Source: Octopus sinensis | Lineage: Eukaryota | DNA length: 64,000 nt | Assembly (NCBI RefSeq): GCF_006345805.1 | Contig: NC_043001.1 | Span: 7,936,001-8,000,000, forward strand | Reading direction: 5' to 3' | Part shown: piece after piece, positions 2,272 through 47,751 of the stretch | Layout: every line of letters starts with the position of its first letter | Numbering within the stretch: position 1 is the stretch's first letter | Made by a program: the position numbers and the translations under genes | Notes under the pieces: model-generated | The model's database searches: none | What the model was told of the DNA's origin: nothing | What the model saw: only the letters and a program-made list of their open reading frames with translations

Positions 2272-5200
2272 TATAAACTACTAATCGTCTAACTCAAATG
2301 TATTCAATCTTATTTCAAAAGGCGCAACGACGGTTGACGCTTTCCCCTGATGTTACAGCTCGTAGATATGAGTTTGAGAAGGGAAGGAATAGCCGGTTTA
2401 GGAAAAGAAAACCATATGACGGCTATAATCTTTACAAGAATCAAGAAAGCTGAGTTCTTTGTTTTCACGTTTTCATTATAGGGAACGAGTCACTTCTCTT
2501 TCTCTTTCAGTAACGTGCATACATACATTCAAAACACGAAAGCGTTGTTAGTCGCTTAAAACCAGTAAGGTTTAGCCCTATTAACATCAAATTTCGTGGA
2601 AATCATCAGGCTCCGTCGCTCTGCCGTGTTATTTTTTTATTTCGAATAATGTTATGATATATCCGAAATAAATACTTATATTCATTATTGTATTTCTGCA
2701 AACAGACATTGTGCTGTGCGATGCATTTTCAGCATATTGAAGATGATGTGAAGCCATTCACCCAGTTGGTATATAGGCCTAACTCTTCTACACGACCAAT
2801 GGCGCGGCTTCCACAAAGCTGCGATAGTCTGACAAATGTATATAGAATGGGCTGAGTCATTCTTTGTTGTTCAGAAGTTTACAACAATAAAGCTACTTGG
2901 ATACTAGTTTCCACTTTGTTTGTCGGATTGGTTATTCTAGAATTTATTGTTTGAGAAAAGAAGTGTTAACGAATAACTCTAGTAGATAAAGCACTGAACT
3001 TTCGTCCAGTGTAGCGAAAGAAAAGACTTGTAAGAGATAAACATTTTTTATTTTCAAACCTCATTCGCTCTCACCTGTTTCTATGAAGCAATAGGCTGCC
3101 AGACATATTCCGTGTCTAAAATGTGGGGCTCCCAGCATCCAACTACGTTTGAACGCCCAACATTCTAGTCACAGTATGCTATTTTGTTTCAAGCATTCTT
3201 TAGATACAATAATTTAGTGGTAGGATGGATTGACTATTACAGAGGAAATCATGATGGGAAAACAATAGAATATTTGAGATAAATAAAGAAAAGTTTTCCT
3301 TGGCGTATTTCTGTTTGTAAAAATGTCGCCAATTTAGTGGATTGGTAAAATAGCTGAGAATTTTAAGGCACAGAAAATAAGTTAAAATTTATAATACCAG
3401 TCATATAATACATATTAAAATGTATGTTTGTTGTGAATCATAATTTCTGAGCAATGTAATGATTCCACGTAAAACAGCAGATGGATGCACATGCGTCTTC
3501 TTTACATTAATATATTCACATAAAAGATTAATGTAAATTGAAATTTAAAAATTTGTCATGGCGATCGTTGAGGCTGCTGTGTTCGTCTTTCGATGGTTGT
3601 TTATTAGAAAACATATAAAATAAGTAAATAATGAGAATTATTTATTTGTTTACTAATGGATAATATGAAAATCATGATTCTTCAACATAGGTAAAAAACT
3701 TTTCTTTTTTTCCGGAAACAAATTTATTTCGAACAATCTCCGTCTAAGCAAAACAAGATAATTTCCCAGACAGAAATTATTATTTCCCGCTTTTTTTAAT
3801 GGAGACATCGTGCGAATTAAACATGACACACTTATCTGCTGTACATGTTTTTTTTTATTAGAAAGCTCTGAATAATACAATGGCACTACACATAATAGTT
3901 TAGTGACAAAGACTTTGATATACTATATAATATATTTACTGAAAGCCGTATCATGCAAACAACAGTTACGAGGAAAATACTTTACGAATTTAATAAGGAG
4001 TCTTTCAATAAATTAAGGCTTAAGGAAATGTAATCCATTTCTCATTACAAGAAGCTTTCAATTGAATCCTCAATAACGTGTCAATATTCAGAAGTTACTT
4101 ACAAACTGATATAGTTTTCAGAAAATACATCAAGAATTCGCACATGAAGTCATCGTGAAGTCCGCTTGTGTCTAAGTCTTCCAAAAGTTTTATTACTATT
4201 GAATCTCAAATCCAAACTACATATCTAACGAAAAACAAATTGCTAGGGAGAAACGTCAACCGGAAATCATATGAACCTACCTTCAAGATAATAATGTACT
4301 CTAGAGGAAGAGTGACAAGCAAAACCAATAGAGAACGAACATAAATGTGAAGTCGATTAAGTTTCAAATTTAGGGTTGGTTAGAACGCTTACACACAGCA
4401 TAATATTAAGTGTTTCAAATGACAAGAAATCTGCAATAAAGGAATTATAATCGATTTTTCAAAAAGTAGAGCTTGTAATAAAGAGATGTGCCTTGTATCT
4501 AAGCATATTTATGTGCAAGAGGTGTAGTGATCTCAAAACATTCAACAACGCGGGTTAATTTTTTCTCATTAAATGAATTATCTGAACTTGAAATAAATAA
4601 CTGTCAGAGAATTCCACTGACATCAGACAAATTTAGGGTTTTTCTAAGAATCTGAATGACAACGAATACGGCAATGATTTCCCAGTTAAATCTGACCAAC
4701 TGGATGGATTTCTATACAATTTCAACCGACGAAATTCCCCTCTTAACTAATGGGTTGACAAGTGGTGAAGGTAAATGACATTTGTGTAAGATGCAGCGCA
4801 GCTTCATAAAAGCTGGGAGATGCATGAGAATTAAAATTACTCAGCAGTTTGGTCATTCTCTACCAACACACTCCTGCACACAGACGAATGCACGCTTGCA
4901 AGCACACACAGGCGTCCACGCACACAACTGCAAACAAACACAAGTGCGCACTCACACATGTATGCAGTCCCACATGCGCACAAGCAACACACCTATATTT
5001 TTTTTCTTTAATCATGAATGTACTTCTTTAGATATAACAATTACAGATGAATGCATTTGCGTTTTCTTCAGATTAATACTCGCAGGAAATAGATTAACGA
5101 GAAATGAAATTTAAAATCGTATCTTAGTAATCGTTAAACGTATTGTGTACGTTATTTGGAGGTTTATTATAAAAGCAAATGAACTATGGAAATTATAAGA

Positions 5201-7620: not shown

Positions 7621-7910
7621 ATTATATTAAATACAGGTTTATTCATCTTACAAGTTTTCCCGATTAAAATTCAGTCATATTTGGGCTACACACTGGAAGG
7701 GTTTTGGTTGTATTAATTTCACAAAGTACCGAATTTTAACGCAGGTATATAATCTGATAAATTTAGTTTGAATTGTTATATTTCGAAATACTGCTAATGG
7801 GCATACATCATATGTTTTCGGTGAATCATATATTTTGCACTGTGTTGTTACACATCTCGGCAATTTTAAAAGTAAAGATATTATATTCACTTTGGATGAG
7901 ATTAAGTTTA
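7621..7910. repeat. Left arm of 290-bp inverted repeat (partner 10151-10440)
   Basis: Ungapped reverse-complement match, about 18 mismatches in 290 bp by manual count. Confidence 0.95.
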
Positions 7911-9253
7911 TCCCTCCTGATAATTTCTCTCACTGCAAACACGAATCCATGCAAGAGACGAACAGCATATTCTCGACATATAAATGCGCTCAATTATTTA
8001 AATTAGTGTCTGCAGAGTATTTATGTATTTTCCAGCATGACAAACTGAGTACACAGAATTTTTCCAAAAGCACCAGGTTGAAATAGCAAATATGGAGGTA
8101 TCGGCTTTTTCTACGGTCAACTTCACTGTGACTGCTGTAATGTAAGATATGAAGGAAGCGTTTTACACCTTAGTATCGCTTGCAGGAGATGTAATATCAA
8201 TTGATTTAAGTGGAGGCTATTGGTTCCAAGACTTGTGTCTGAATTTCTCAGAACTAAAATTGTATTAAAAAGTAAGGAGGAGAAACCTTTTCGGCCCAAT
8301 AGAGTTGTGGGAAGATTTCTGGACACATATTAATAACATCTTTAATTAGCAAGCATGCAAATTTTGAATTAAAACCGAAGATTAGCTTCAACTAAGACGA
8401 ATAATATCTCAACTGAAAACGATTCTGATTGAAACGTTTCCTATGAGCTTGTGTTTGTTTTGTAGCGTTGGACAGATGCGGCCTACAAAAGTATTAAGAT
8501 ATTACACAATAACGCGGCAAAACATTATATTTAACGAAAAATGCAATGCAATAAGCAACACAGAAATTTACGTTTCATACGTACTCAGACGCTCCTCCAC
8601 ACAAACAAACGCACACAAATATATATTTTTTGAGCCAATAAATACTGGACCCGCTGGATTTTGAATAGCAGTTTATGAATGCTTATGCATGTATTAAATG
8701 AAGTACTGCATTGTATGTTTATAAGAAAATTGTTAAAATGTGTCTACATCACGTATCTTTCAATATCATGACACGAGTTGGGAGAGTTCTTAGAAAATTC
8801 AGTTAGGTTTCTATATATGCACGGTATTTTTTTCATATTAATGCATATCATAAATGGAAATCGTGAATATAACCATGTTTTATTCAAATACACAGTAATT
8901 TTCTTCGTATTATATATAATAGAAAATATAATTACCATAATTTCCATCATATATAAATCTTAATTTCATAAATATAGTAAGCCAGCCGCAAAACAAGTTA
9001 TTTGAGCTAAATCTGAAAAAAAGATGTCTGGATGTGGGATAGTGGTAAATGCTGTTTATTGGCCCAGTAAACTCGTATTAAGGAAGGAAAGAAATGTATT
9101 TAGCTTCTGGCTGTAAAAAAGTTTGATATCATAAATACACTATTTTCGTTTTTCAAATTGAATCTCTACGACAAATATATACATATTTATTTTTAAATTC
9201 TTACCATACATATAGATATGAGTGCGTATGGGTGTGAATTCAAGATATATGCG

Positions 9254-9655: not shown

Positions 9656-10150
9656 CAGAGCGAAAGGGAGAGAGATTGAGAGATATATGTATAGATAGAA
9701 AGAGACCGAGTAAATCCCTCTCATAAAGTGTATGTGTGCTTGTGTGTGTGCGCGCGCATGTGTGTATGTACATATGTACATGATAAGTTGCAATGTTTGC
9801 CTGACAGGTATTTGCATAGGACCGCCCTGCTGGTACAGACGACTTATTTCATAATATATTAAATTATATTTGGGTAAACATATTTTTACTCATTTTTGAC
9901 ACAGATTTCTGTTTAAATATACAAGAACAAGACATGTCTGTCATCAGCGCCAATATCATTATCTGCATTTTTCTGCGATTATTATCATCAATCTGCTACT
10001 ATAACAGTGAAAATGATTGGAAACAGGCACCATAGATTAGGGAATGATTTAAATATATTTTTAAGGGAATTATATGTTTCCAGATAAAAACATTATCCGG
10101 TATCTCATATAGTGATACATCTCTTGACCACAAGATTAAATATTTGCAGA

Positions 10151-10440
10151 GAAAATTAACCTCGCCCAAAGTGAATATAATACCTTTACATTTAAAATTA
10201 TCGAGATGTGTAACAACACAGTGCAAAATATATGATTCACCGAAAACATATGATGTATGCCCATTAGCAGTATTTCGAAATATAACAATTCAGACTAAAA
10301 TTATCAGATTATATACCTGCGTTAAAATTAGATACTTTGTGAACTTAATACAACCAAAACCCTTCCAGTGTGTAGCCCAAACATGACTGAATTTTAATCG
10401 GGAAAACTTGTAAGATGAAGGAAGCTGTATTTAATATAAT
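10151..10440. repeat. Right arm of 290-bp inverted repeat (partner 7621-7910)
   Basis: The same peptide string (RCVTTQCKIYDSPKTYDVCPLAVFRNIT) appears on opposite strands in the ORF track. Confidence 0.95.
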
Positions 10441-10782
10441 GTGGTTTGCATCAGAAGAAACACAGAAAGAAAAAACGACAATTCCTGAATATAAAATAGC
10501 ACAGACACGCAGCTATAATATTTTCAGCATCATTTATAACAATTTTGGGAAATAATTAAATAACTGAACTGAAATTAATTCATGTGATAAATCCAAAGAT
10601 GTTTTGCATGAGCCTCAGCAAGAATAACTTTCAGTGATCGCCATGCTAAAATAATTATTCCTATTTTGTGCTCAAAGAAGCAGTGCATCAGTTATAAGCT
10701 AATTTATGTGGTCAATCAAACAACATATTAGTGCTCGGAATATCTCGGTCGAAATCACCAGAACACCTGGATTCATCCAGCA

Positions 10783-10957
10783 TGGATAATGTAGATCACG
10801 GCATGATACTTCATATGCTAAAGGACTTTGGTATTGTTGCGAAACTGGGTGAGTGGCTGCATATCTTCCTTAAAGACAGAAATCAGGTCGTCGTAGCCAA
10901 TGGTTCCCTTTCTGAGGAAAGTCATATCTTATGGGGCATCCCACAGGGAACTGCTCT
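10783..10957 (+). mobile_element. CR1/L2-clade LINE reverse transcriptase fragment
   Basis: DNVDHGMILHMLKDFGIVAKLGEWLHIFLKDRNQVVVANGSLSEESHILWGIPQGTAL matches the FDKVDH...RxQxV.NG..S.....GVPQG RT motif run. Confidence 0.85.
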
Positions 10958-11732
10958 GTATGATGAGGGAAGATCAATTTGTTAGGAAAAGTAAAAGAAA
11001 ATCATTACATCAGATATAAATGACTCTTAAACAGCAGAAGGTTTGATTTGGTTTTTCTCAAACGAGAAAAACTTCAACTAAGATCACAGAGGAAATGACA
11101 GATGTTTATGTGCAAACCCTTCTGAAGTTCCAAGTGTTATGCATACAAAGCTCCCTGTATCTGTCATGGTTTTAGATGTTATCACCAATGAATGGCATTT
11201 GATGCCTCCTCACTTCTTTCCACAAGCCTTTACGGTAAATTCTAGCCGCCCACATTGAGGTGCTGGATATAACTGTTAAGCCCTGGATAGAGTTTGCATA
11301 CAAAGGGAGGCCATATGTGTTTCAATAAGGCTCTACACTATCACACATGACTCCGATTGAAAATGTTTCCCGATCAAATAATCCCTAAAATTTGGCCTCC
11401 TAATTCCCCAAATCTCAATCAACTGTATTATCAAATCTGGAGTGTTTTTGAGAGACAGGTCAATAAAAACGCACATAACCGCAAAGATTCTTTGAAATCT
11501 TCTATAGCCAGAGTAATATCCCAAATGAACCAGGACCACTTGATTAGAGCTTTTAGATGGTTTCAAACTCATATAGAAGCAGTTGTTGATGCTGAAGGTG
11601 GCTTTATTGAATAACATTATAGAAAAGAATGTTTATTTGTACCATGACAGCTTTTTGATAAAAAAAGTTATAATCTGTTATTATATATCTATTTTCTATA
11701 AACATAAACCCTCAATTATCTCACGCACCCTG
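10958..11732 (+). pseudogene. Tc1/mariner DD37D (maT-like) transposase remnant with 3' TIR end
   Basis: Frameshifted translation WFFSNEKNF...MPPHFFPQ...KPWIE...RPYVFQ*...WPPNSPNLNQLYYQIWSVFERQVN...EAVVDAEGGFIE*. All three catalytic Asp positions are altered (SDEK>SNEK, QQD>Q*G, PLDY>QLYY). Ends ...CACCCTG at 11732. Confidence 0.9.
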
Positions 11733-13045: not shown

Positions 13046-13168
13046 TCTCATGGTTTCATGTGTTCAAGTGTACTCAGCGTTTGTTCCGCCTCTAGACTGG
13101 GTGTGTGCATACTCTGTCTACGTGTATCTATGTGTCTTCATATATGTATCTATCCATATACATATATA

Positions 13169-13543
13169 GGATCAGGAGTGGCTGTGTGGTAAGTAGCTTG
13201 CTTACAAACCACATGGTTCCTGGTTCAGTCCACTGCGTGGCATCTTGGGCAAGTGTCTTCTGCTATAGCCCCGGGCCGACCAATGCCTTCTGAGTGGATT
13301 TGGTAGACGGAAACTGAGAGAAGCTTGTTGTATATATGTATATATATATGTATATGTGTGTTTGTGTGTCTGTGTTTGTCCCCCTAGCATTGCTTGACAA
13401 CCGATGCTGGTTCGGCAAAAGAGACCGATAGAATAAGTACTAGGCTTACAAAGAATGAGTCCCAGGATCGATTTCCTCGACTAATGGCGGTGCTCCAGCA
13501 TGGCCGCAGTCAAATGACTTAAACACGTAAAAGAGTAAAGAGT
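13169..13543 (+). mobile_element. SINE family B (tRNA head, CORE-like middle), internal deletion
   Basis: aggagtggctgtgtggtaag...ggcatcttgggcaagtgtctt...aaatgact; lacks the gtgtttacgtccccgtcac segment present in the copy at 34741. Confidence 0.9.
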
Positions 13544-21374: not shown

Positions 21375-21761
21375 GTGGAAACACTCCGTCGGTTACGACG
21401 ATGAGGGTTCCGGTTGATCCGAATCAAGGGAACAGCCTGCTCGTGAAATTGATGTGTAAGTGGCTGAGCACTCCACAGACACGTGCACACTTAACGTAGT
21501 TCTCGGGGATATTCAGCGTGACGCAGAGAGTGACAAGGTCGGCCCCTTGAAATACAGGTACAACAGAAACAGGAAGTAAGAGTGAGAGAAAGTTGTGGTG
21601 AAAGAATACAGCAGGTATTACTACCATCCCCTGCCGGAGCCTCGTGGAGCTTTTTAGGTGTTTTCGCTCAATAAACACTCACAACGCCCGGTCTGGAATC
21701 GAAACCACGATCCTATGACCGCGAGTCCGCTGCCCTAACCACTGGGCCATTGCGCCTCCAT
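21375..21761 (-). mobile_element. Full-length tRNA-derived SINE (head A, tail beta) with 12-bp TSD
   Basis: TSD aatcgtattatt at 21363-21374 and 21762-21773; intact A and B boxes on the minus strand. Confidence 0.95.
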
Positions 21762-22575: not shown

Positions 22576-22605
<30 letters not shown>

Positions 22606-22610
<5 letters not shown>

Positions 22611-23252
22611 TCAATTTAGGGTAGCAAAAATTCAGTAAAAATTTATCGCTACCAGCGGCCTAATGGAAAAGAGAAAATAGTCAAAGACTAAATATGTATA
22701 AATATAACAATTTAGGAATGGCCTAAACAGGCCATTCGTGGACGAATGGCCTGTTTAGGCCATTCCTAAATTGTTATATTTATACATATTTAGTCTTTGA
22801 CTATTTTCTCTTTTCCATTAGGCCGCTGGTAGCGATAAATTTTTACTGAATTTTTTGCTACCCTAAATTGATTAATTGATAATTTTCTGACTAATTCTGA
22901 GATTGAATCGGCAGTTATATTTGCTGCCGATACGTTTGGCGCGAATGCGTTGGTCTTGAAATTTTAAGACAGATATTCCCGAGGCATTGATACAGTCGCC
23001 TCGTGTATATCCGTCTCTCCCAGGTTTCTTTTACTGATGAAGTGTGACCTATGGTAGACTAGCTTAATTTAATTTAATTAAGCTGGTCTATCATTAAAGA
23101 CACTGAAACGATGCATCGTATAAAAGATGAATTAGGGTAAATGTTTTTAATTTTCACCTTATTTCCGAATTACACTACTTGGCGGTTGGAGTTATGGCTG
23201 CTCTTTCTGGTGGACGAATGGCCTGTTTAGGCCATTCCTAAATTGTTATATT

Positions 23253-23256
<4 letters not shown>
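22606..23256 (+). mobile_element. Non-coding HHR retroelement, copy 1: inverted 134-bp head + 472-nt unit + 47-nt terminal redundancy
   Basis: 22606-22739 is the rc of 22742-22876 (one homopolymer indel); 22738-22784 recurs at 23210-23256; flanked by (TA)n; no ORF. Confidence 0.85.
23019..23137 (+). ncRNA. Type I hammerhead ribozyme with extended stem II (copy 1)
   Basis: Stem I UCUUUUA (23027-33)/UAAAAGA (23121-27); CUGAUGA 23034-40; stem II AGUGU/ACACU, 5x5 internal loop, 19-bp helix with two G-U pairs; GAAA 23105-08; stem III CGAUGCAUCG; GUA cleavage triplet, predicted cut after 23120. Confidence 0.9.
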
Positions 23257-23335
<79 letters not shown>

Positions 23336-23383
23336 TTGTATATATATACATATATATATATATAATATATATATTATATATAT

Positions 23384-24036
23384 ATTAATCAATTTAGGGT
23401 AGCAAAAAATTCAGTAAAAATTTATCGCTACCAGCGGCCTAATGGAAAAGAGAAAATAGTCAAAGACTAAATATGTATAAATATAACAATTTAGGAATGG
23501 CCTAAACAGGCCATTCGTGGACGAATGGCCTGTTTAGGCCATTCCTAAATTGTTATATTTATACATATTTAGTCTTTGACTATTTTCTCTTTTCCATTAG
23601 GCCGCTGGTAGCGATAAATTTTTACTGAATTTTTTGCTACCCTAAATTGATTAATTGATAATTTTCTGACTAATTCTGAGATTGAATCGGCAGTTTATAT
23701 TTGCTGCCGATACGTTTGGCGCGAATGCGTTGGTCTTGAAATTTTAAGACAGATATTCCCGAGGCATTGATACAGTCGCCTCGTGTATATCCGTCTCTCC
23801 CAGGTTTCTTTTACTGATGAAGTGTGACCTATGGTAGACTAGCTTAATTTAATTTAATTAAGCTGGTCTATCATTAAAGACACTGAAACGATGCATCGTA
23901 TAAAAGATGAATTAGGGTAAATGTTTTTAAATTTTCACCTTATTTCCGAATTACACTACTTGGCGGTTGGAGTTATGGCTGCTCTTTCTGGTGGACGAAT
24001 GGCCTGTTTAGGCCATTCCTAAATGTTATATTTATA
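23384..24036 (+). mobile_element. Non-coding HHR retroelement, copy 2 (tandem duplicate)
   Basis: Near-identical to 22606-23256; perfect 135-bp arms 23384-23518 / 23521-23655 with a GG loop. Confidence 0.85.
23799..23917 (+). ncRNA. Type I hammerhead ribozyme with extended stem II (copy 2)
   Basis: Identical to copy 1 at +780; predicted cut after 23900. Confidence 0.9.
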
Positions 24037-24052
24037 TATATATATATATATC

Positions 24053-24093
<41 letters not shown>

Positions 24094-24134
24094 TTGTATA
24101 TATATACATATATATATATATAAGTGTGTATATA

Positions 24135-24177
<43 letters not shown>

Positions 24178-24178
<1 letters not shown>

Positions 24179-24511
24179 GATATGGGACCCCCTTCGGTCA
24201 CGACACTGACCATGGGATTGCACCTAGAAAGTTACCTTCCTAAGCACAAGTCCGGGCAACGTTGTTTATGGAAGACAACCATACCGGCCTCCCCTCTCCA
24301 CGCCATCAGAGTTATCCAAGGGAAAGGCAAAGGGGCCGATACAGCTTGGCACCTGTGACGTCGCAACTCATTTCTACAGTTGAGTTAACTGGAGCAACGG
24401 GAAATAAAGTCTCTTGCTCAAGAACACAACACGCAGCCCGGTCCATGATTCGAGATCACAACTTCACGATCGTAAGCTCGACGCTCTAACCCCTGAGCCA
24501 TGCGCCTTCAC
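24178..24511 (-). mobile_element. SINE (head 2, CORE-like, tail delta)
   Basis: rc of gtgaaggcgcatggctcagggg...cttgagcaagagactttatttc; distinct 3' tail ending gaccgaagggggtccc. Confidence 0.85.
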
Positions 24512-24714: not shown

Positions 24715-25031
24715 GACTCCGCCGGTTACGACGACGAGGGTCCCACCTGATACGATCAACGGAACAGCTTGCTCGTGAAATTAACGTGCAAATGGCTGAG
24801 CATTCCACAGACACGTTTACCCTTAACGTAGTTCTCAGGGATAATCAGCGTGACACAGAGAGTGACAAGGCTGCCCCTTTGAAATACAAGTACAACTCAT
24901 TTTTGCCAGCTGTGTGGACTGGAGCAACGTGAAATAAAGTGTCTTGCTCAAGGATACAACGCGTCGGCGGGAATCGGACTCACAACCTTACGATCATGAG
25001 CCGAATGCCCTAACCACTAAGCCACGCGCCC

Positions 25032-32532: not shown

Positions 32533-33455
32533 GATTGATTCTAGTTTCAGCTCACGAGCTGTGGCCATGATGGGGCATCGCCATTTGGTGTTGCTACATG
32601 GTTTTACTTCACGAATGCTTTTTAGCAACTGCCATTTGGTGCATGAGAGAGTTCGATGCAGCTGCCCTCATCTGTACCTCCTGCCGTGAAGGTGGTTCAT
32701 CTGGGATACCTGACAAGAAGAGATCCAGTTTCGTTTTAAAGACATCTGCATCCACCCCTTGTAGGTCTCTTAGGTTCTTCGGGAGGATATTGAAGAGCTG
32801 TGGGCCTTGGAAGCCCAGGCTATCACAGTATCTTGTCCTACATCTTGATGGCAAATTTGGAGCATTTGGCACCACGCAGTGGCGCCCAATTCTGACATTT
32901 GTGTAACTCTCGATGCCAAAGTTTGGGACAAGTCCTTCTAGGATCTTCCAGATGTATATTATGGCATATCTTTCTCGCCTGCGCTCCAAGGAATAGAGTT
33001 TTAATCTCTTGAGTCTTTCCCAGTAGCTTATATTCTGCACAGAGGCTATCTTCTTCGTGTAGCTACGTTGGATCGCGTCAAGTTCTGTGATCAACTTGAC
33101 ACTGGATGGTGACCATAGCTGAGAGCAATAGTCAAAGTGGCTTAGGACAAGTGTCTTCCAGAGGACCATCATGGTTTCTTATTCTCTTGTTCTAAAGGTT
33201 CTAAGAATCCATCCGGCCAGTCGTCTACATTTCATTGCCAATTTAGCAACATGTACACGAAAGGTTGCGTCATCACTCATGTAAATACCCAGGTCACGCA
33301 CTGATTGTGCCTCTGGGATTGCAATTCCTCCGGGTCCAGTGTATTCATTGGGTATTGCATTTAGTTTTGCATGCTGATAGCATAAAGCTTGAAACTTTTC
33401 AGCATTGAACTGCATGCTATTCTTTTCAGCCCACTTGTATATTTTGTCCAGCTCA
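32533..33455 (-). mobile_element. 5'-truncated CR1/L2-clade LINE (ORF2 C-terminus + 3' UTR)
   Basis: One frame ELDKIYKWAEKNSMQFNAEKFQAL...RTFRTRE*ETMMVLWKTLVLSHFDYCSQLWSP...YWERLKRLKLYSLERRRERY...; a single in-frame TAA at 33181-33179 joins the two track ORFs; flanked by (TA)n. Confidence 0.93.
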
Positions 33456-33472
33456 TATATATATATATATAT

Positions 33473-33636
33473 AGCGAGAGTTTACTAAAAAACAAAACAC
33501 GAAGACAGGTGGTGTACAAAACAGACATATGTATTAGTATAACGCTCAGGAATAGAAAAATTATTTTACGTTTCGAGCCTACGCTCATCTACAAAAAGGG
33601 ACACAGAATAAAACAGGAGAGAAAGGAGAGAAAAAT
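33473..33636 (-). mobile_element. Short (TA)n-flanked Penelope-like repeat (family P4)
   Basis: Homologous to 13670-13870. Confidence 0.7.
33564..33597 (-). ncRNA. Degenerate minimal hammerhead-like motif (family P4)
   Basis: UUU-UUGUAGA-U-GAGC(GUAG)GCUC-GAAA-CG-UA-AAA; shares A6U with 13760 and also has C3U. Confidence 0.5.
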
Positions 33637-34339: not shown

Positions 34340-34675
34340 TGTTTCATTCCATAAGTTCTGGGGTCGAACAAACCGACCCCAGTACTTATTCTCTGTAAGC
34401 CTAGTAATTATTCTACTGTTCTTCAGACGAACTTCAGTTACGGCGACATAAACACAGCAACATCGGTTGTCAAGCGATTGGGGTGAGACAAACACAAACA
34501 CACATACATATATACATATATATGACGGGCTTCTTTCAGTTTCCGTCAACCAAATCCACTCACCGAGTTTAGTCAGCCCGAGGCTATAGTAGAAGAAAAT
34601 TCCCAAGGAACTGTACTGTCACTGTACACGGAACCATATGGTTGTGAAGCAAGCGTCTTCCACACAGACATATTT
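34340..34675 (-). mobile_element. SINE family B (older, diverged copy)
   Basis: rc homology to 34741-35192. Confidence 0.8.
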
Positions 34676-34740
34676 ACACGAACACGCTAAATCAAATTTA
34701 AGACACACTCGCACGGAAATAAATATAAACAAAAGAAATA

Positions 34741-34908
34741 GGCGCAGGAGTGGCTGTGTGGTAAGTAGCTTGCTTACCAACCACATGGTTCCGGGTTCAG
34801 TCCCACTGCGTGGCATCTTGGGCAAGTGTCTTCTGCTATAGCCCCGGGCCGACCAATGCCTTGTGAGTGGATTTGGTAGACGGAAACTGAAAGAAACCTG
34901 TCGTTTTA

Positions 34909-34944
<36 letters not shown>

Positions 34945-35192
34945 TTCTGTTTTAATATATATATATATGTGTGTGTGTGTGTGTTTGTGTGTCTGTGCTT
35001 GTCCCCCTAGCATTGTTTGACAACCGATGTTGGTGTGTTTACGTCCCCGTCACCTAGCGGTTCGGCAAAAGAGACCGATAGAATAAGTACTTGGCTTACA
35101 AAAAATAAGTCCTGATTTGCTCGACTAAAGGCGGTGTTCCAGCATGGCCACAGTCAAATGACTGAAACAAGTAAGAGAGAGAGAGTAAAGAG
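34741..35192 (+). mobile_element. SINE family B, full length
   Basis: ggcgcaggagtggctgtgtggtaag, B-box GGGTTCAGTCCC, CORE-like cttgggcaagtgtctt, internal (TA)/(TG) tract duplicated, AG-rich tail. Confidence 0.93.
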
Positions 35193-35506
35193 AATATACA
35201 TATTTAACGGTTTTTTTCAAAATAACAGCATGGACACGCACACACAATACATACACGAATATAAAAATGTTATTCTGTTAATGGTCACCCGATCAATTAT
35301 GATGTAATTTCTTCTGTTTTAATTCTGATCCTGATGAAGTATTTAAATTGCAATTTTGAAAATTAAATTTTAATTTATTAAATTCGTTATAGAGTAAGTT
35401 GAATATGGAAACAATTGTAGGTAGCAGACAATTTTAATAAGGTGTTAATAAATTGATGTTTATCGGATAAATCTTTCCTTTTTCTTAGTATTGAATACTA
35501 TATTCG

Positions 35507-40565: not shown

Positions 40566-42344
40566 ATATATATATATATATAAAGAGAAAAACGACCAGT
40601 TTTGTATCTCTGAGAAAGAAATACAGTAAAGTGTATTTGTCAACGCAAGGTGCCAGACCCTGCTGGAAAAATTGTTTTTTTTTTGGGGGGGGGGCACTAT
40701 TGAATATGTCATTGAATGCACAAACACGTATTTGATAAGAAACATAAGGTCCGTTGTAATTTATAAAACACATCCAGAGAAAATACGCACTTCAGTCGTG
40801 ATAAACTTACTTGATAAATGAACAGATATTAAAAACTTAATCCTGTTTCTACAGATGCATGCACTGAAAAAATTTCAAAGAAAATCATGCGACTTTGTAA
40901 AGCAATATGTGAACATGCGAGTATGTGCAAGAAATATGAAATTAACAAATCCTGACTAAAGTACACATTACCTCAAGCTATATGCATGGATTTTTAACGA
41001 GCATAAATCATGAGTTAGCACTGCATTAAAATATATTCACAAGCATAACAGGTTTTACGTATTTCACTTCATTTCACTTCAGCAATCATGATATTCATCG
41101 CTTATTTTATTTTATTATTTTTTTTTGTAATACTTTATTTATTCACACAATATAAGCAAATCGGTAAAAAAAATCTTCATATTATATACATACAAAATTT
41201 TCGTTATAATTAGGATAATTCATCAGATATATTTTTAATTGGATGAAAGTAACATTTTCTTTGTCATATCTGTATATACTGGGTTATCCCGTAAATAATA
41301 TTTTTGTTTCTTTATACTTCTTTTATTTTTCATGAGAAGCAAATTATTTTTTAAATCTAAAATATACTCTCCTTAATTTTCTACAATGGTCTTCCACATA
41401 ACGGGTAGAATTGCTAGAATTCCAAAAATTAATTTTTCTGTGACCAAATATACTCCTTCAGTATTGTTCTGACTTCGTCTACAGATATCATTCTATGTTC
41501 CGACCAAATGATTTTGATGATTGCGGAATAAAGGACAATCAGATGCGAATATGGCGAATATGGTGGGTGATTTTGGTACTGAATTACAACGACAAGAAAC
41601 AGGAAGCCCAACATGCATTTTTCGGACGGCGTCTTTGAACATGTTGGAAGCACTACGCTTTCTAATTAATGTGTGAGAACCTCTAGCGACACCAGCTGCC
41701 GGCCATAAAATGTGATAGGTATCCCTAATGTATGAATGACCGTGTGCATACCTGTTGCGTATGCATGCGTAAGTGTCCACAGTGTGTTCGTGTGCGTATT
41801 AGCATTATTTGCTTCATGTGGACGTACGTGTACATGTGGGTGAATGTATGTTTGCATGTTGTGTCATGTGTGTATGTACCCATCTCTGGTATTTACGTGT
41901 GCCTGAGCACGTTCGTCGAGTAACCTGGTGTGTGCGCAGATGTGGAAATGTTGACTTAGCATATGTAACGACTAAAGTGCTGTTGTGCTGTGTCAAAGAA
42001 ACTTACACCAGATTTAATGTTGGAGTTAATTTTGGTGGTGCCAAAGCGAAGAAAGTTGGAAAAGGAAGCACACATACACTCACATATATATGATGACACT
42101 CATAGAAGATAGGAGTTTCCACAAACTATGTGAGAAGGGGAGTATAAGCCACCTACTCTTGTTTATGTTGCTCTATATATATATATACATACACATATGA
42201 TACTGCATAGATACTGCAGATTTTTAAGGTAACGCGTGTCTGTGCATTGCTCAACCACTTTTCCTTTAATGATCACGAGTAGGCCGTTCGTTTGACCGGT
42301 GGGTCTATCAATAGATATACAGATACACAGTTACTTATAATCTC

Positions 42345-46919: not shown

Positions 46920-47105
46920 CGTATTTGATATATATATATATATATATATAATATATATAAAAGCAATTAAGATTCAAGTCAGTTCTAATGAATTCACTTG
47001 AATATGGTACTTAACTTAGATGCACCAGAAAACTATATGGTGTTAACCAATACAGTAGTGTGGGGTGATTATAAACGAGAAAAGAAGCAACAAGAATGGA
47101 TTAGT

Positions 47106-47196
47106 TTTTAGTACAATTGTTTCATACAAAGACAGGTTTTATTAAAAGTTGCAAATATTGCAGCAGATAAAAGTGTCCCGTACTCTTCAGCTAAAA
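47106..47196 (-). ncRNA. Type I hammerhead ribozyme (family 2, minus-strand arm)
   Basis: UUUUAG-CUGAAGA-GUAC...GUAU-GAAA-CAAUUG-UA-CUAAAA; predicted cut between 47112 and 47111. Confidence 0.85.
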
Positions 47197-47590
47197 TACA
47201 CGTGAGTTCCCTAAACATCTTAGTGGGTAAGGCTACACTCATGAAGTATTGGAGATAATTTCATTAAAAGCAGATTCAGGTTGTAAACAGACTTCCAAAG
47301 TTCTTTAATGATGATGCACAGTCTTATCACAGGTTTTTAAAAAAGGTTATTAGTTTCACAGAGAAGTTTAATCCATCCATAGTGTAGGTGTAAATTTCCA
47401 GAGATATGAGGAGGTATTTCATACTCACAGACGATGAATTTATCCATGGTTAATCCACAATGAGGTGGGTATAATTTCATGCTAAATTATAAGGTATTTG
47501 CCACATTACTGTTCTGCTTTTAATGAAATTATCTCCAATACTTCATGACTGTAATCTCACCCACTAAGATGTTTAGAGAACTCACATGTA

Positions 47591-47681
47591 TTTTAGCTGA
47601 TGAGTACGGGACACTTTTATCTGTTGCAATATTTGCAACTTTTAATAAAGCCTGTCTTTGTATGAAACAATTGTACTAAAA
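47591..47681 (+). ncRNA. Type I hammerhead ribozyme (family 2, plus-strand arm)
   Basis: Stem I UUUUAG/CUAAAA; CUGAUGA 47597-603; 60-nt extended stem II capped by GUUGCAA-UAU-UUGCAAC; GAAA 47664-67; palindromic CAAUUG; GUA, predicted cut after 47675. Confidence 0.87.
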
Positions 47682-47710
47682 ACTAATCCATTCTTGTTGC
47701 TTCTTTTCTC

Positions 47711-47751
<41 letters not shown>

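What the first reader, a model, noticed from the sequence alone, without database searches (positions are those of the whole stretch)
23019..23917. Tandem pair of complete type I hammerhead ribozymes with an unusually long stem II
Seen: every canonical core element is present (CUGAUGA, GAAA, A15.1-U16.1, GUA site). Stem I has 7 bp, a UG bulge, then further pairing (UU/AA, GG/UU, CCC/GGG). Stem II is a 64-nt arm (5 bp, 5x5 internal loop, 19-bp helix). The two deviations from a DNA palindrome in that helix are both G-U wobbles, which argues for selection on RNA structure. Stem III is self-complementary (CGAUGCAUCG). Established: type I HHRs with palindromic stem III are typical of Penelope-like elements and retrozymes and can cleave as dimers (Cervera and de la Pena 2014; Lunse et al. 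2017); those motifs usually have short stem II. Inference: an intact, probably active ribozyme of a long-stem-II class in which the internal loop replaces loop II as docking partner for the stem I bulge.
Basis: partly seen in the sequence, partly recalled or inferred. Interest (0 to 1): 0.9.

Follow-up and report, generated by a model that had tools for sequence, protein, structure and literature searches.

The report
Hammerhead ribozyme in a duplicated retroelement
Two identical copies of a complete type I hammerhead (self-cutting RNA) motif with an unusually long second arm sit in a small non-coding, retrozyme-like repeat of an animal (probably crustacean) genome; this is a known kind of element with an unusual shape, and cutting activity is untested.

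Summary
At 23019-23137 and 23799-23917 (+) lie two identical type I hammerhead motifs. Each has the full core, a 7-bp helix I, a 64-nt helix II arm and a palindromic helix III (CGAUGCAUCG). A descriptor scan finds five such motifs in the window against 0.03 expected by chance. All five have a helix II arm of 60-70 nt: A1, A2, an inverted pair at 47.1/47.6 kb, and a decayed one at 35.3 kb.

Rfam Hammerhead_1 does not detect the reported copies. It gives 19.3 bits (threshold 34) for the 47.6-kb copy.

The "tandem pair" is secondary. One non-coding insertion lies in a (TA)n microsatellite: a 472-nt monomer, a 45-nt start of a second monomer, and a 132-nt inverted arm. That insertion was later duplicated as a 779-bp block, apparently by unequal exchange within (TA)n.

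The architecture matches Penelope-like-element (PLE) insertions and animal non-LTR retrozymes. No reverse transcriptase or endonuclease gene lies nearby.

The monomer's lowest-energy fold hides the core, and a dimer with a 12-bp helix III is strongly favoured. Cleavage as a dimer is therefore the likeliest mode. Activity, helix I/II docking and covariation could not be tested. Verdict: a real motif, a new structural variant of a known kind, of moderate interest.

The parts
23019..23137 (+). Hammerhead A1, complete type I motif. Helix I 23019-23033 with 23121-23137; core 23034-23040 and 23105-23108; predicted cut between A23120 and U23121.
   Evidence: Sequence; RNAfold; descriptor scans.
23799..23917 (+). 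Hammerhead A2, identical copy. Core 23814-23820; predicted cut after A23900.
23041..23104 (+). Helix II arm of A1 (64 nt): 5 bp, a 5x5 internal loop, a 19-bp helix with two G.U pairs (23054.23091 and 23060.23085), and a 6-nt loop.
23109..23118 (+). Helix III, the palindrome CGAUGCAUCG. As a monomer it forms 3 bp plus a UGCA loop. In a dimer it forms a 10-bp duplex, 12 bp counting the A15.1-U16.1 pairs. Its 3' half can alternatively pair with core U4-G8.
22740..23211 (+). 472-nt non-coding monomer M that carries hammerhead A1. Folded as a circle it gives -140.5 kcal/mol, z = -6.7, 64% paired, 36% GC.
23212..23256 (+). The first 45 nt of M repeated head-to-tail (a partial tandem, or PLE-type 'tail'), running into (TA)n.
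22608..22739 (-). Inverted copy of the first ~133 nt of M. It forms a near-perfect palindrome with 22742-22874, with a 2-nt centre.
   Evidence: I3: 114-nt arms, 100% complementary.
22579..22607 (.). Left (TA)n flank of the insertion.
23247..23385 (.). Middle (TA)n array. Its 5' part matches the right array (68 nt identical, 23298-23365 = 24056-24123). Its 3' end matches the left flank.
24027..24176 (.). Right (TA)n flank.
22626..24183 (+). Two copies of the 779-781-bp block (22626-23404 and 23405-24183). Outside the (TA)n arrays they differ only by single-base homopolymer-length indels.
   Evidence: D4-D6; 99.5% over 639 nt.
47591..47681 (+). Hammerhead B. Core 47597-47603; helix II arm 60 nt; helix III CAAUUG; predicted cut after A47675. 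It lies in the forward arm 47513-47717, which abuts (TA)n at 47714.
   Evidence: Rfam Hammerhead_1 19.3 bits, E = 0.017, full model with a 54-nt insertion in helix II.
47106..47196 (-). Hammerhead B', an inverted copy of B in arm 47070-47274. N7 is A. Two changes weaken helix II.
35319..35430 (+). Hammerhead-like motif C, decayed. The core is intact, helix III is CAAUUG and the arm is 70 nt, but 10.1/11.1 is A.G and no stable helix II forms.

Best explanation
The feature is a genuine type I hammerhead ribozyme motif carried by a small, non-coding, highly structured retroelement with a 472-nt monomer. The element is of the kind called animal non-LTR retrozymes, or non-autonomous derivatives of Penelope-like elements (PLEs).

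How the locus arose (inferred):
- One copy was inserted by a PLE-type mechanism into a (TA)n microsatellite.
- The insertion consists of one full monomer, a 45-nt start of the next monomer (so the template was multimeric or circular), and a 132-nt inverted arm at the 5' end.
- The whole insertion plus its downstream (TA)n was later duplicated once, by unequal exchange or slippage between the flanking (TA)n arrays. This produced the two identical hammerheads 780 nt apart.

How it most likely works (inferred):
- The + strand is transcribed.
- The hammerhead cuts after A17 (23120 and 23900), leaving a 2',3'-cyclic phosphate and a 5'-OH end.
- A single motif is largely self-inhibited, because CAUCG of helix III can pair with core U4-G8.
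- When two motifs meet, in one read-through transcript or in trans, their palindromic helix III halves form a 12-bp helix and both cores become free. This is the classic double-hammerhead.
- The released unit-length RNA could be ligated into a circle and copied by a PLE reverse transcriptase supplied in trans.

The long helix II is a lineage-specific elaboration shared by three unrelated element families in this genome. In copy A its proximal 5 bp plus internal loop occupy the place of the usual 4-5-bp helix II plus loop 2.

What is shown: motif anatomy, statistics, locus architecture, absence of ORFs, and predicted energies. What is inferred: transcription, cleavage, dimer dependence, circularisation and mobilisation by a PLE.
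For: Motif:
- All core nucleotides and three helices are present.
- 5 descriptor hits against 0.01 expected, and 5 with palindromic helix III against 0.03 expected.
- An independent family (B) with the same architecture scores on Rfam Hammerhead_1 over the full model.
- A and B share no helix sequence, yet both keep helices I-III around an identical core.
- Between B and B', the only change in the core region is at N7, the one free position.

RNA-level structure:
- The monomer as a circle has z = -6.7.
- The non-hammerhead part has z = -6.5 on the + strand and -4.45 on the - strand, with 14 against 2 G.U pairs.

Dimer:
- -96.1 kcal/mol against 2 x -40.7.
- The active monomer fold is -39.7 and the core-sequestering lowest-energy fold is -40.7.

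Element type:
- A 472-nt period with 1.1 copies, plus a perfect inverted arm.
- Each of the four loci (counting A1/A2 once) has (TA)n 39-163 nt downstream of its cut site, against a 13% background within 160 nt, so roughly 3e-4 if independent.
- No Pfam domain in any ORF of 55 aa or more within about 4 kb of each locus.
- These features match published PLE insertion traits: partial tandems, an inverted 5' copy, a 30-40-bp tail, and microsatellite bias including (TA)n (PMC8557442).
- They also match dual hammerheads 100-700 bp apart on opposite strands (PMC4209133).
- And they match retrozyme traits: AT-rich, non-coding, self-paired, type I hammerhead; reported in crustaceans (PMC7229834).

Secondary duplication:
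- The middle (TA)n array is a hybrid of the right array (5' part) and the left flank (3' part).
- The blocks differ only by homopolymer indels.
Against: - No cleavage data exist.
- Rfam finds no hammerhead at the A copies even at E<=10.
- 10.1-11.1 is A-U in A and G.U in B, instead of the highly conserved G-C (PMC3088659).
- PLE-type hammerheads cleave poorly in vitro (PMC4209133).
- No diverged copies of family A could be obtained, so there is no within-family covariation.
- B' shows two uncompensated helix II changes.
- No PLE reverse transcriptase or GIY-YIG gene lies in the 64-kb window, so the link to PLEs rests on insertion anatomy only.
- A 472-nt monomer is at or above the upper end of reported animal retrozyme sizes (150-450 bp).
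- An assembly artefact cannot be excluded for the 779-bp duplication.
Confidence: 0.6

Rival explanations
1. Inert relic. The motif descends from a true hammerhead of a retroelement, but these copies are catalytically dead or negligible and do nothing. The long helix II is just a tolerated insertion of a palindromic sequence into loop 2.
For: - Non-canonical 10.1-11.1 pairs in both A and B (PMC3088659).
- A competing fold that hides the core.
- A is not detected by Rfam and B scores below threshold.
- C is clearly decayed and B' carries uncompensated helix II changes.
- PLE hammerheads are poorly active in vitro, and PLE clades without hammerheads proliferate well (PMC4209133, PMC8557442).
Against: - The core is intact in four of five copies.
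- Three unrelated families all keep 60-70-nt arms.
- The two departures from the palindrome are wobbles on the ribozyme strand.
- The + strand excess of structure extends over the whole monomer.
- The A copies are very young: the arms and blocks are identical.
Confidence: 0.25
2. The 779-nt block itself is the mobile retrozyme monomer. The two copies would then arise from rolling-circle reverse transcription of a 779-nt circular RNA that includes the (UA)n tract and the 267-nt hairpin.
For: - Two essentially identical head-to-tail units with one hammerhead each.
- Ribozyme-flanked repeats can be expressed as circles from 150 to over 1000 nt (PMC7229834).
Against: - The array starts and ends in (TA)n, and the middle array is a left/right hybrid, as expected for unequal exchange.
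- Inside the block there is already a 472-nt periodicity of 1.1 copies. This points to a shorter template.
- The (TA)n arrays differ between copies while the unique sequence does not.
Confidence: 0.1
3. Chance resemblance. The region would be AT-rich palindromic DNA, such as a foldback or MITE-like DNA transposon or a microRNA-like hairpin, that happens to contain CUGAUGA and GAAA.
For: - The region is full of palindromes.
- Rfam gives only weak microRNA-precursor-like hits to the helix II hairpin (17-21 bits against thresholds of 47-102).
- The bare sequence pattern occurs by chance in large collections. The one metagenome, 62 viral and one bacterial pattern matches I examined all lacked the full hammerhead helices.
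Against: - Descriptor hits are 100-500 times above shuffles.
- Five motifs share the same unusual architecture, and one matches Rfam over the full model.
- The chance hits elsewhere lack helices I and II, unlike those in the window.
Confidence: 0.03

Closest known systems
Animal non-LTR retrozymes (Cervera and de la Pena 2020, PMC7229834; Li, Clavereau and Pollet 2026 preprint, 10.64898/2026.07.22.740005)
   Same: - Type I hammerhead in a short, AT-rich, non-coding, highly self-paired repeat arranged head-to-tail.
- Reported in crustaceans among many invertebrates.
- Proposed to be PLE-dependent.
- Helix III of 2-3 bp plus a tetraloop, as in invertebrate retrozymes.
   Different: - Only 1.1 monomers per insertion here, not long arrays.
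- The monomer is 472 nt (reported 150-450 bp).
- An inverted arm is attached.
- Helix II is a 64-nt arm instead of about 4 bp plus loop 2.
- No expression or circular RNA evidence.
Hammerheads of Penelope-like element pseudo-LTRs (Cervera and de la Pena 2014, PMC4209133; Lunse et al. 2017, known from citation only)
   Same: - Small palindromic helix III, explicitly reported for shrimps, flies, rotifers and mosquitoes.
- Probable action as dimers.
- Dispersed single motifs, and pairs on opposite strands 100-700 bp apart (as with B and B').
- Helix II larger than usual.
- Insertion anatomy: partial tandem, inverted 5' copy, tail, microsatellite targets (PMC8557442).
   Different: - No RT/GIY-YIG ORF at the locus.
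- Helix I is long (7 bp plus extension), not 2-5 bp.
- Helix III is present, unlike in min-HHRs.
- Helix II has 21-24 bp in a 60-64-nt arm, against 6-8 bp.
Classical satellite-type hammerheads acting as double-hammerheads: newt satellite 2, and the Aedes aegypti repeat-type hammerhead (Forster et al. 1988 via PMC6155905; Perreault et al. 2011, PMC3088659, Fig. S8)
   Same: - The palindromic helix III/loop III can form a 10-bp stem in a dimer.
- The monomer is weak or inactive.
- The motif lies in repetitive DNA.
   Different: - Those have short helix II with a defined loop 2.
- The copies here are 780 nt apart because of a block duplication, not a 330-nt satellite.
Rfam RF00163 Hammerhead_1
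   Same: Same core and topology. Copy B aligns over model positions 1-45.
   Different: A is not reported at any threshold tried. B scores 19.3 bits against a gathering score of 34.

Membership tests
Hammerhead ribozyme, type I | Conserved core: C3 U4 G5 A6 N7 G8 A9, G12 A13 A14, A15.1-U16.1, H17 not G | tested here: met
   CUGAUGA at 23034-23040, GAAA at 23105-23108, U23119, A23120. The same holds in A2, B, B' (N7 = A) and C.
Hammerhead ribozyme, type I | Three helices around the core, with helix I open-ended and helices II and III closed by loops | tested here: met
   Helix I 7 bp plus extension, helix II 5+19 bp, helix III 3 bp plus A15.1-U16.1. The active fold is -39.7 kcal/mol against a lowest-energy fold of -40.7.
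Hammerhead ribozyme, type I | Canonical G10.1-C11.1 closing pair of helix II | tested here: not met
   A-U in A and G.U in B. Variants at this pair are known in active natural hammerheads (PMC3088659), so this lowers the expected activity, not the assignment.
Hammerhead ribozyme, type I | Score at or above the Rfam RF00163 gathering threshold | tested here: not met
   No hit for A at gathering, or at E<=10. B scores 19.3 bits against 34.
Hammerhead ribozyme, type I | Covariation in the helices among homologous copies | tested here: inconclusive
   A1 and A2 are identical. B and B' differ at 3 positions in the motif, none compensatory. Across families A and B all helix sequences differ while pairing is kept, but they are not alignable homologues. 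No external copies were found.
Hammerhead ribozyme, type I | Site-specific Mg2+-dependent self-cleavage | not testable with these tools
   Needs in vitro transcription or RNA end mapping.
Hammerhead ribozyme, type I | Tertiary contact between helix I loop/bulge and loop 2 | not testable with these tools
   The distances to the first irregularity are 7 bp (helix I) and 5 bp (helix II) in A, against a canonical 6 and 4 (PMC4209133). This is suggestive only. B shows 6 and 6.
Animal non-LTR retrozyme | Head-to-tail repeats of a few hundred bp, each with a type I hammerhead | tested here: inconclusive
   A 472-nt period, but only 1.1 copies. The two full hammerheads belong to a 779-bp block duplication.
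Animal non-LTR retrozyme | Non-coding, low GC (<45%), highly self-paired RNA | tested here: met
   No Pfam domain. 36% GC, 64% paired, z = -6.7.
Animal non-LTR retrozyme | Expression as linear and circular unit-length RNA | not testable with these tools
   No transcriptome available.
Penelope-like element (autonomous) | ORF with a PLE reverse transcriptase and GIY-YIG endonuclease between pseudo-LTRs | tested here: not met
   Only 5 ORFs of 150 aa or more in the window, none PLE-like. No Pfam hit in ORFs within about 4 kb of the three loci.
Penelope-like element insertion signature | Partial tandem or tail, an inverted copy adjoining the 5' end, and insertion into microsatellites | tested here: met
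   A 45-nt second-monomer start, a 132-nt inverted arm with a 2-nt centre, and (TA)n on both sides. B/B' are inverted arms between (TA)n arrays. The traits are as described in PMC8557442.

The most novel reading that the evidence does not exclude
This (probably crustacean) lineage may have a distinct structural class of type I hammerhead in which a 60-70-nt, 21-24-bp helix II arm is a selected, functional module. It could be the docking partner for helix I through its internal loop. It could also be a handle recognised by the PLE reverse transcriptase or an RNA ligase, or a Dicer-type substrate. The class is shared by at least three unrelated retroelement families and is invisible to current Rfam and RNAmotif descriptors. 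If so, hammerhead censuses of arthropod genomes systematically under-count these motifs.
Probability: 0.2. Interest if true: 0.6.

Novelty: new variant of a known kind. Interest (0 to 1): 0.4.

Why it matters
Hammerheads in animal repeats, their palindromic helix III and their link to PLEs and retrozymes are all established, so the kind of element is not new.

Three things are useful here.
1. Helix II is about three times longer than anything called "long" in the papers I could read. It recurs in three unrelated families within 64 kb, and the curated Rfam model misses it. Descriptor and covariance-model censuses with short helix II limits would therefore overlook this class.
2. In copy A, the helix III palindrome doubles as an anti-core sequence. 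This gives a simple, testable monomer-off/dimer-on switch.
3. The locus cleanly separates the retro-derived periodicity (472 nt) from a later microsatellite-mediated DNA duplication (779 bp). This is a caution against reading any pair of ribozymes as a retrozyme array.

None of this changes how hammerheads are thought to work.

Tried and rejected
- Rfam at the gathering threshold over the whole window found only a marginal tRNA-like hit. Rfam at E<=10 over 2 kb and over 146 nt found no hammerhead for A, only weak hairpin-type matches.
- External copies for covariation:
  - The metagenome scan with core plus helix III gave one hit, a chance match inside a piggyBac-like coding region.
  - The viral-contig scans gave 0 hits for the A pattern. 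For the B pattern they gave 62 hits, none with both helices I and II, so all are chance or coding-sequence matches.
  - The bacterial/archaeal genome scan gave one chance hit in a coding region.
  - No eukaryotic nucleotide collection was available.
- Self-BLAST of the unit against the window found no further copy of family A, and no similarity to the B or C loci outside the core.
- Organism identification:
  - An exact look-up of the RT-tail ORF found nothing on record.
  - Its homologues include Oratosquilla oratoria and Petrolisthes cinctipes at 45-47% identity. The best hits are unnamed ENA contigs at 66%.
  - This points to a malacostracan crustacean, but the species was not resolved.
Concatenated ORFs were used instead.
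- The supplement of PMC4209133, which shows shrimp hammerheads, and Lunse et al. 2017 are not held. I could not check whether long helix II arms were already drawn there.
- I considered and rejected a second ribozyme of opposite polarity in the unit (none), a microRNA precursor, and a tRNA gene at 24960-25029 (ARAGORN finds none).
- Two further descriptor hits, 2487-2609 (-) and 41194-41226 (-), look like chance. They have weak AT-only or 3-bp helix II and a non-palindromic helix III.
Full report
**1. The observation**

The sequence at 23019-23137 contains, in order:
- the distal and proximal 5' strand of helix I, with UCUUUUA at 23027-23033;
- CUGAUGA at 23034-23040;
- a 64-nt hairpin arm at 23041-23104;
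- GAAA at 23105-23108;
- the self-complementary decamer CGAUGCAUCG at 23109-23118;
- U23119 and A23120;
- the 3' strand of helix I, with UAAAAGA at 23121-23127, a UG bulge, then AAUU, A and GGG.

The arm consists of AGUGU/ACACU, a 5x5 internal loop, a 19-bp helix and a 6-nt loop. The only two departures of that helix from a perfect DNA palindrome are G23054.U23091 and U23060.G23085.

An identical copy lies 780 nt downstream. RNAfold recovers helices I and II without constraints (z = -5.45).

**2. Is it more than chance?**

I wrote a hammerhead descriptor: CUGANGA, helix II closed by at least 3 bp with an arm up to 100 nt, GAAA, a helix III segment of 2-14 nt, U followed by a non-G, and helix I of at least 4 bp.
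- It gives 5 hits in the window against a mean of 0.01 in 100 dinucleotide-preserving shuffles.
- A relaxed version gives 6 hits. Five of them have a palindromic helix III, against 0.03 expected.

The five are:
- A1 and A2;
- B, at 47597-47675 (+);
- B', at 47112-47190 (-);
- C, at 35331-35419 (+).

All five have helix II arms of 60-70 nt, although the descriptor accepted 8-110 nt.

The same sequence patterns found in the collections scanned (62 viral contigs, one metagenome contig and one bacterial genome contig) never come with the helices. This serves as a negative control.

**3. Rfam**

Hammerhead_1 is not reported for A at the gathering score, at E<=10 in 2 kb, or at E<=10 in 146 nt. B is matched over the whole model (positions 1-45). 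It scores 19.3 bits against a gathering score of 34, with E = 0.017 and a 54-nt insertion placed in helix II.

It succeeds sub-threshold for a sister motif of the same architecture.

**4. Anatomy of the locus**

The two hammerheads belong to two copies of a 779-781-bp block, at 22626-23404 and 23405-24183. Outside the (TA)n arrays the blocks differ only by single-base homopolymer-length indels (99.5% over 639 nt).

Each block is composite:
- a 132-nt arm (22608-22739) that is the reverse complement of 22742-22874 (114 nt at 100%, with a 2-nt centre);
- a forward stretch in which 22740-23211 (472 nt) is followed by a repeat of its own first 45 nt (23212-23256);
- a (TA)n array.

The retro-derived periodicity is therefore 472 nt, present as 1.1 copies, with an inverted arm at the 5' end.

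The insertion is bracketed by (TA)n. The middle array shares a 68-nt interrupted segment with the right array and ends like the left flank. That is the footprint expected from unequal exchange or slippage between the flanking microsatellites. I conclude that the "tandem pair" is a recent DNA-level duplication of one insertion. An assembly artefact cannot be excluded.

**5. The sister loci**

B and B' lie in inverted arms (47070-47274 and 47513-47717; 95% complementary) separated by 238 nt. (TA)n arrays lie outside both arms.

The arms differ at 10 of 205 positions. Three of these fall in the motif:
- N7, the one free core position;
- two changes that each break a helix II pair in B'.

C keeps the core and the CAAUUG helix III but has lost helix II closure.

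In each of the four loci (counting A1/A2 once), a (TA)n array of at least 8 units lies 39-163 nt downstream of the predicted cut. This is true of only 13% of positions in the window within 160 nt. If the loci are independent, the joint chance is about 3e-4.

No ORF of 55 aa or more within about 4 kb of any locus has a Pfam domain. The window has only five ORFs of 150 aa or more. Four are microsatellite translations and one is the tail of a non-LTR reverse transcriptase.

**6. What kind of element?**

Published descriptions of PLE insertions list the following (PMC8557442):
- heavy 5' truncation;
- partial tandems forming pseudo-LTRs;
- an inverted truncated copy adjoining the 5' end;
- a 30-40-bp tail;
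- a bias for microsatellites, including (TA)n.

Cervera and de la Pena (PMC4209133) report hammerheads dispersed as single motifs, and as pairs 100-700 bp apart on opposite strands. They also report PLE hammerheads with a small palindromic helix III in shrimps, flies, rotifers and mosquitoes.

Animal non-LTR retrozymes are short, AT-rich, non-coding, self-paired tandem repeats with type I hammerheads. They are found also in crustaceans and are thought to depend on PLEs (PMC7229834, PMC7761336, preprint 10.64898/2026.07.22.740005).

The present loci fit these descriptions. The 472-nt periodicity argues for a short non-autonomous template rather than a truncated 3-4-kb PLE.

The RT-tail ORF at 32609-33172 has its named relatives in Oratosquilla oratoria and Petrolisthes cinctipes. 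The host is therefore probably a malacostracan crustacean, but the species was not resolved.

**7. RNA-level evidence**

Folded as a circle, the 472-nt monomer gives -140.5 kcal/mol (z = -6.7, 64% paired).

| Non-hammerhead part of the monomer (353 nt) | + strand | - strand |
|---|---|---|
| Fold energy (kcal/mol) | -100.9 | -80.0 |
| G.U pairs | 14 | 2 |
| z against dinucleotide shuffles | -6.5 | -4.45 |

The + strand is U-rich, so part of this difference is compositional. About 8 kcal/mol remains beyond the shuffle difference. This is modest support for selection on the + strand RNA. It is stronger than the two-wobble argument alone, for which I estimate a chance of roughly 0.03-0.1.

**8. 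Likely mechanism**

- The monomer's lowest-energy fold (-40.7 kcal/mol) pairs core U4-G8 with CAUCG, the 3' half of helix III.
- The catalytically competent fold is only 1 kcal/mol higher (-39.7).
- Two molecules together reach -96.1, against -81.4 for two monomers. They form a 12-bp intermolecular helix III and leave both cores free.

This is the double-hammerhead known from newt and viroid motifs, and proposed for Aedes repeats (PMC6155905; PMC3088659, Fig. S8). In copy A there is an extra built-in anti-core element. B lacks that complementarity.

In A, the proximal helix II (5 bp) plus internal loop, and helix I (7 bp) plus UG bulge, are each one pair longer than the canonical 4 and 6 bp (PMC4209133).

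Two points count against high activity:
- 10.1-11.1 is A-U in A and G.U in B;
- PLE-type motifs cleave poorly in vitro.

**9. Comparison and novelty**

The class, the topology, the palindromic helix III, the dimer logic and the repeat context are all known.

Helix II is what differs. The papers available give 4-5 bp as usual, and-8 bp "large" or "long" (PMC4209133; bioRxiv 10.1101/2024.05.16.594327). Here there are 21-24 bp in 60-64-nt arms, recurring in three unrelated families.

I could not read the supplementary figures that show the shrimp motifs, nor Lunse et al. 2017. Prior depiction of such arms therefore cannot be excluded. I rate the feature a new variant of a known kind, with interest 0.4.

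**10. Verdict**

- Observation: confirmed.
- Interpretation: partly supported.
- Best explanation (confidence 0.6): a genuine, possibly dimer-dependent hammerhead of a retrozyme-like, PLE-type non-autonomous element. It was inserted into (TA)n and then duplicated as a 779-bp block.
- Main rival (confidence 0.25): the same origin, but with catalytically inert copies.
- Decisive tests: cleavage assays, RNA end and circle mapping, and a genome-wide census with a long-helix-II descriptor.

Noticed in passing
window 47070-47717: A second hammerhead family (B and B') forms an inverted pair. The arms are 205 nt, 95% complementary and 238 nt apart, with (TA)n arrays outside both arms. B is the only motif in the window that Rfam Hammerhead_1 scores (19.3 bits).
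   Followed up: yes
window 35319-35430 (+): A decayed hammerhead-like motif C. Its core is intact, helix III is CAAUUG and the arm is 70 nt, but it has lost helix II closure. (TA)n lies 94 nt downstream.
   Followed up: partly
window 2487-2609 (-) and 41194-41226 (-): Two further weak descriptor hits, with 3-bp or AT-only helix II and a non-palindromic helix III. They are probably chance matches.
   Followed up: partly
window 32612-33481 (-): C-terminal part of a non-LTR retrotransposon reverse transcriptase, broken by a stop at 33179-33181. Its named relatives are in Oratosquilla oratoria and Petrolisthes cinctipes (45-47% identity). The best hits are unnamed ENA contigs at 66%.
   Followed up: partly
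window 24960-25029 (-), with 21500-21564 and 24832-24896: A marginal Rfam tRNA match (30.2 bits against 29) that ARAGORN does not call. It sits next to a 65-nt direct repeat (88% identity, 3.3 kb apart). It may be a tRNA-derived SINE relic.
   Followed up: partly
window 7678-8083 and 10002-10383: Two stretches of 300 bp or more in inverted orientation, about 2 kb apart. They give near-identical translations (IVIFRNTANGHTSYVFGESYILHCVVTHL...). They may be terminal inverted repeats of a DNA transposon or two copies of one repeat. Seen only in the ORF list.
   Followed up: no
window 10698-10982 (+) and 11351-11611 (+): By eye, a reverse-transcriptase fragment and a Tc1/mariner-like transposase C-terminal fragment. 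Neither was searched.
   Followed up: no
window 13096-13480 and 34593-34951: A shared repeat family that translates to ...RSGCVVSSLLTNHMVPGSV... and ...FRLPNPL.RHWSARGYSRRHLPKMPRSG.... Seen only in the ORF list.
   Followed up: no
whole window: Extreme microsatellite load: 61 (TA)n arrays of at least 8 units, plus many ATAG, TATC, CA and GA arrays, in 33% GC DNA. Tandem Repeats Finder reported 92 rows.
   Followed up: partly
L001 (metagenome contig Ga0209985_10068007), 1328-1405: The only metagenome match to the core plus helix III pattern lies inside what looks, by eye, like a piggyBac-like transposase coding region. It is not a ribozyme.
   Followed up: partly
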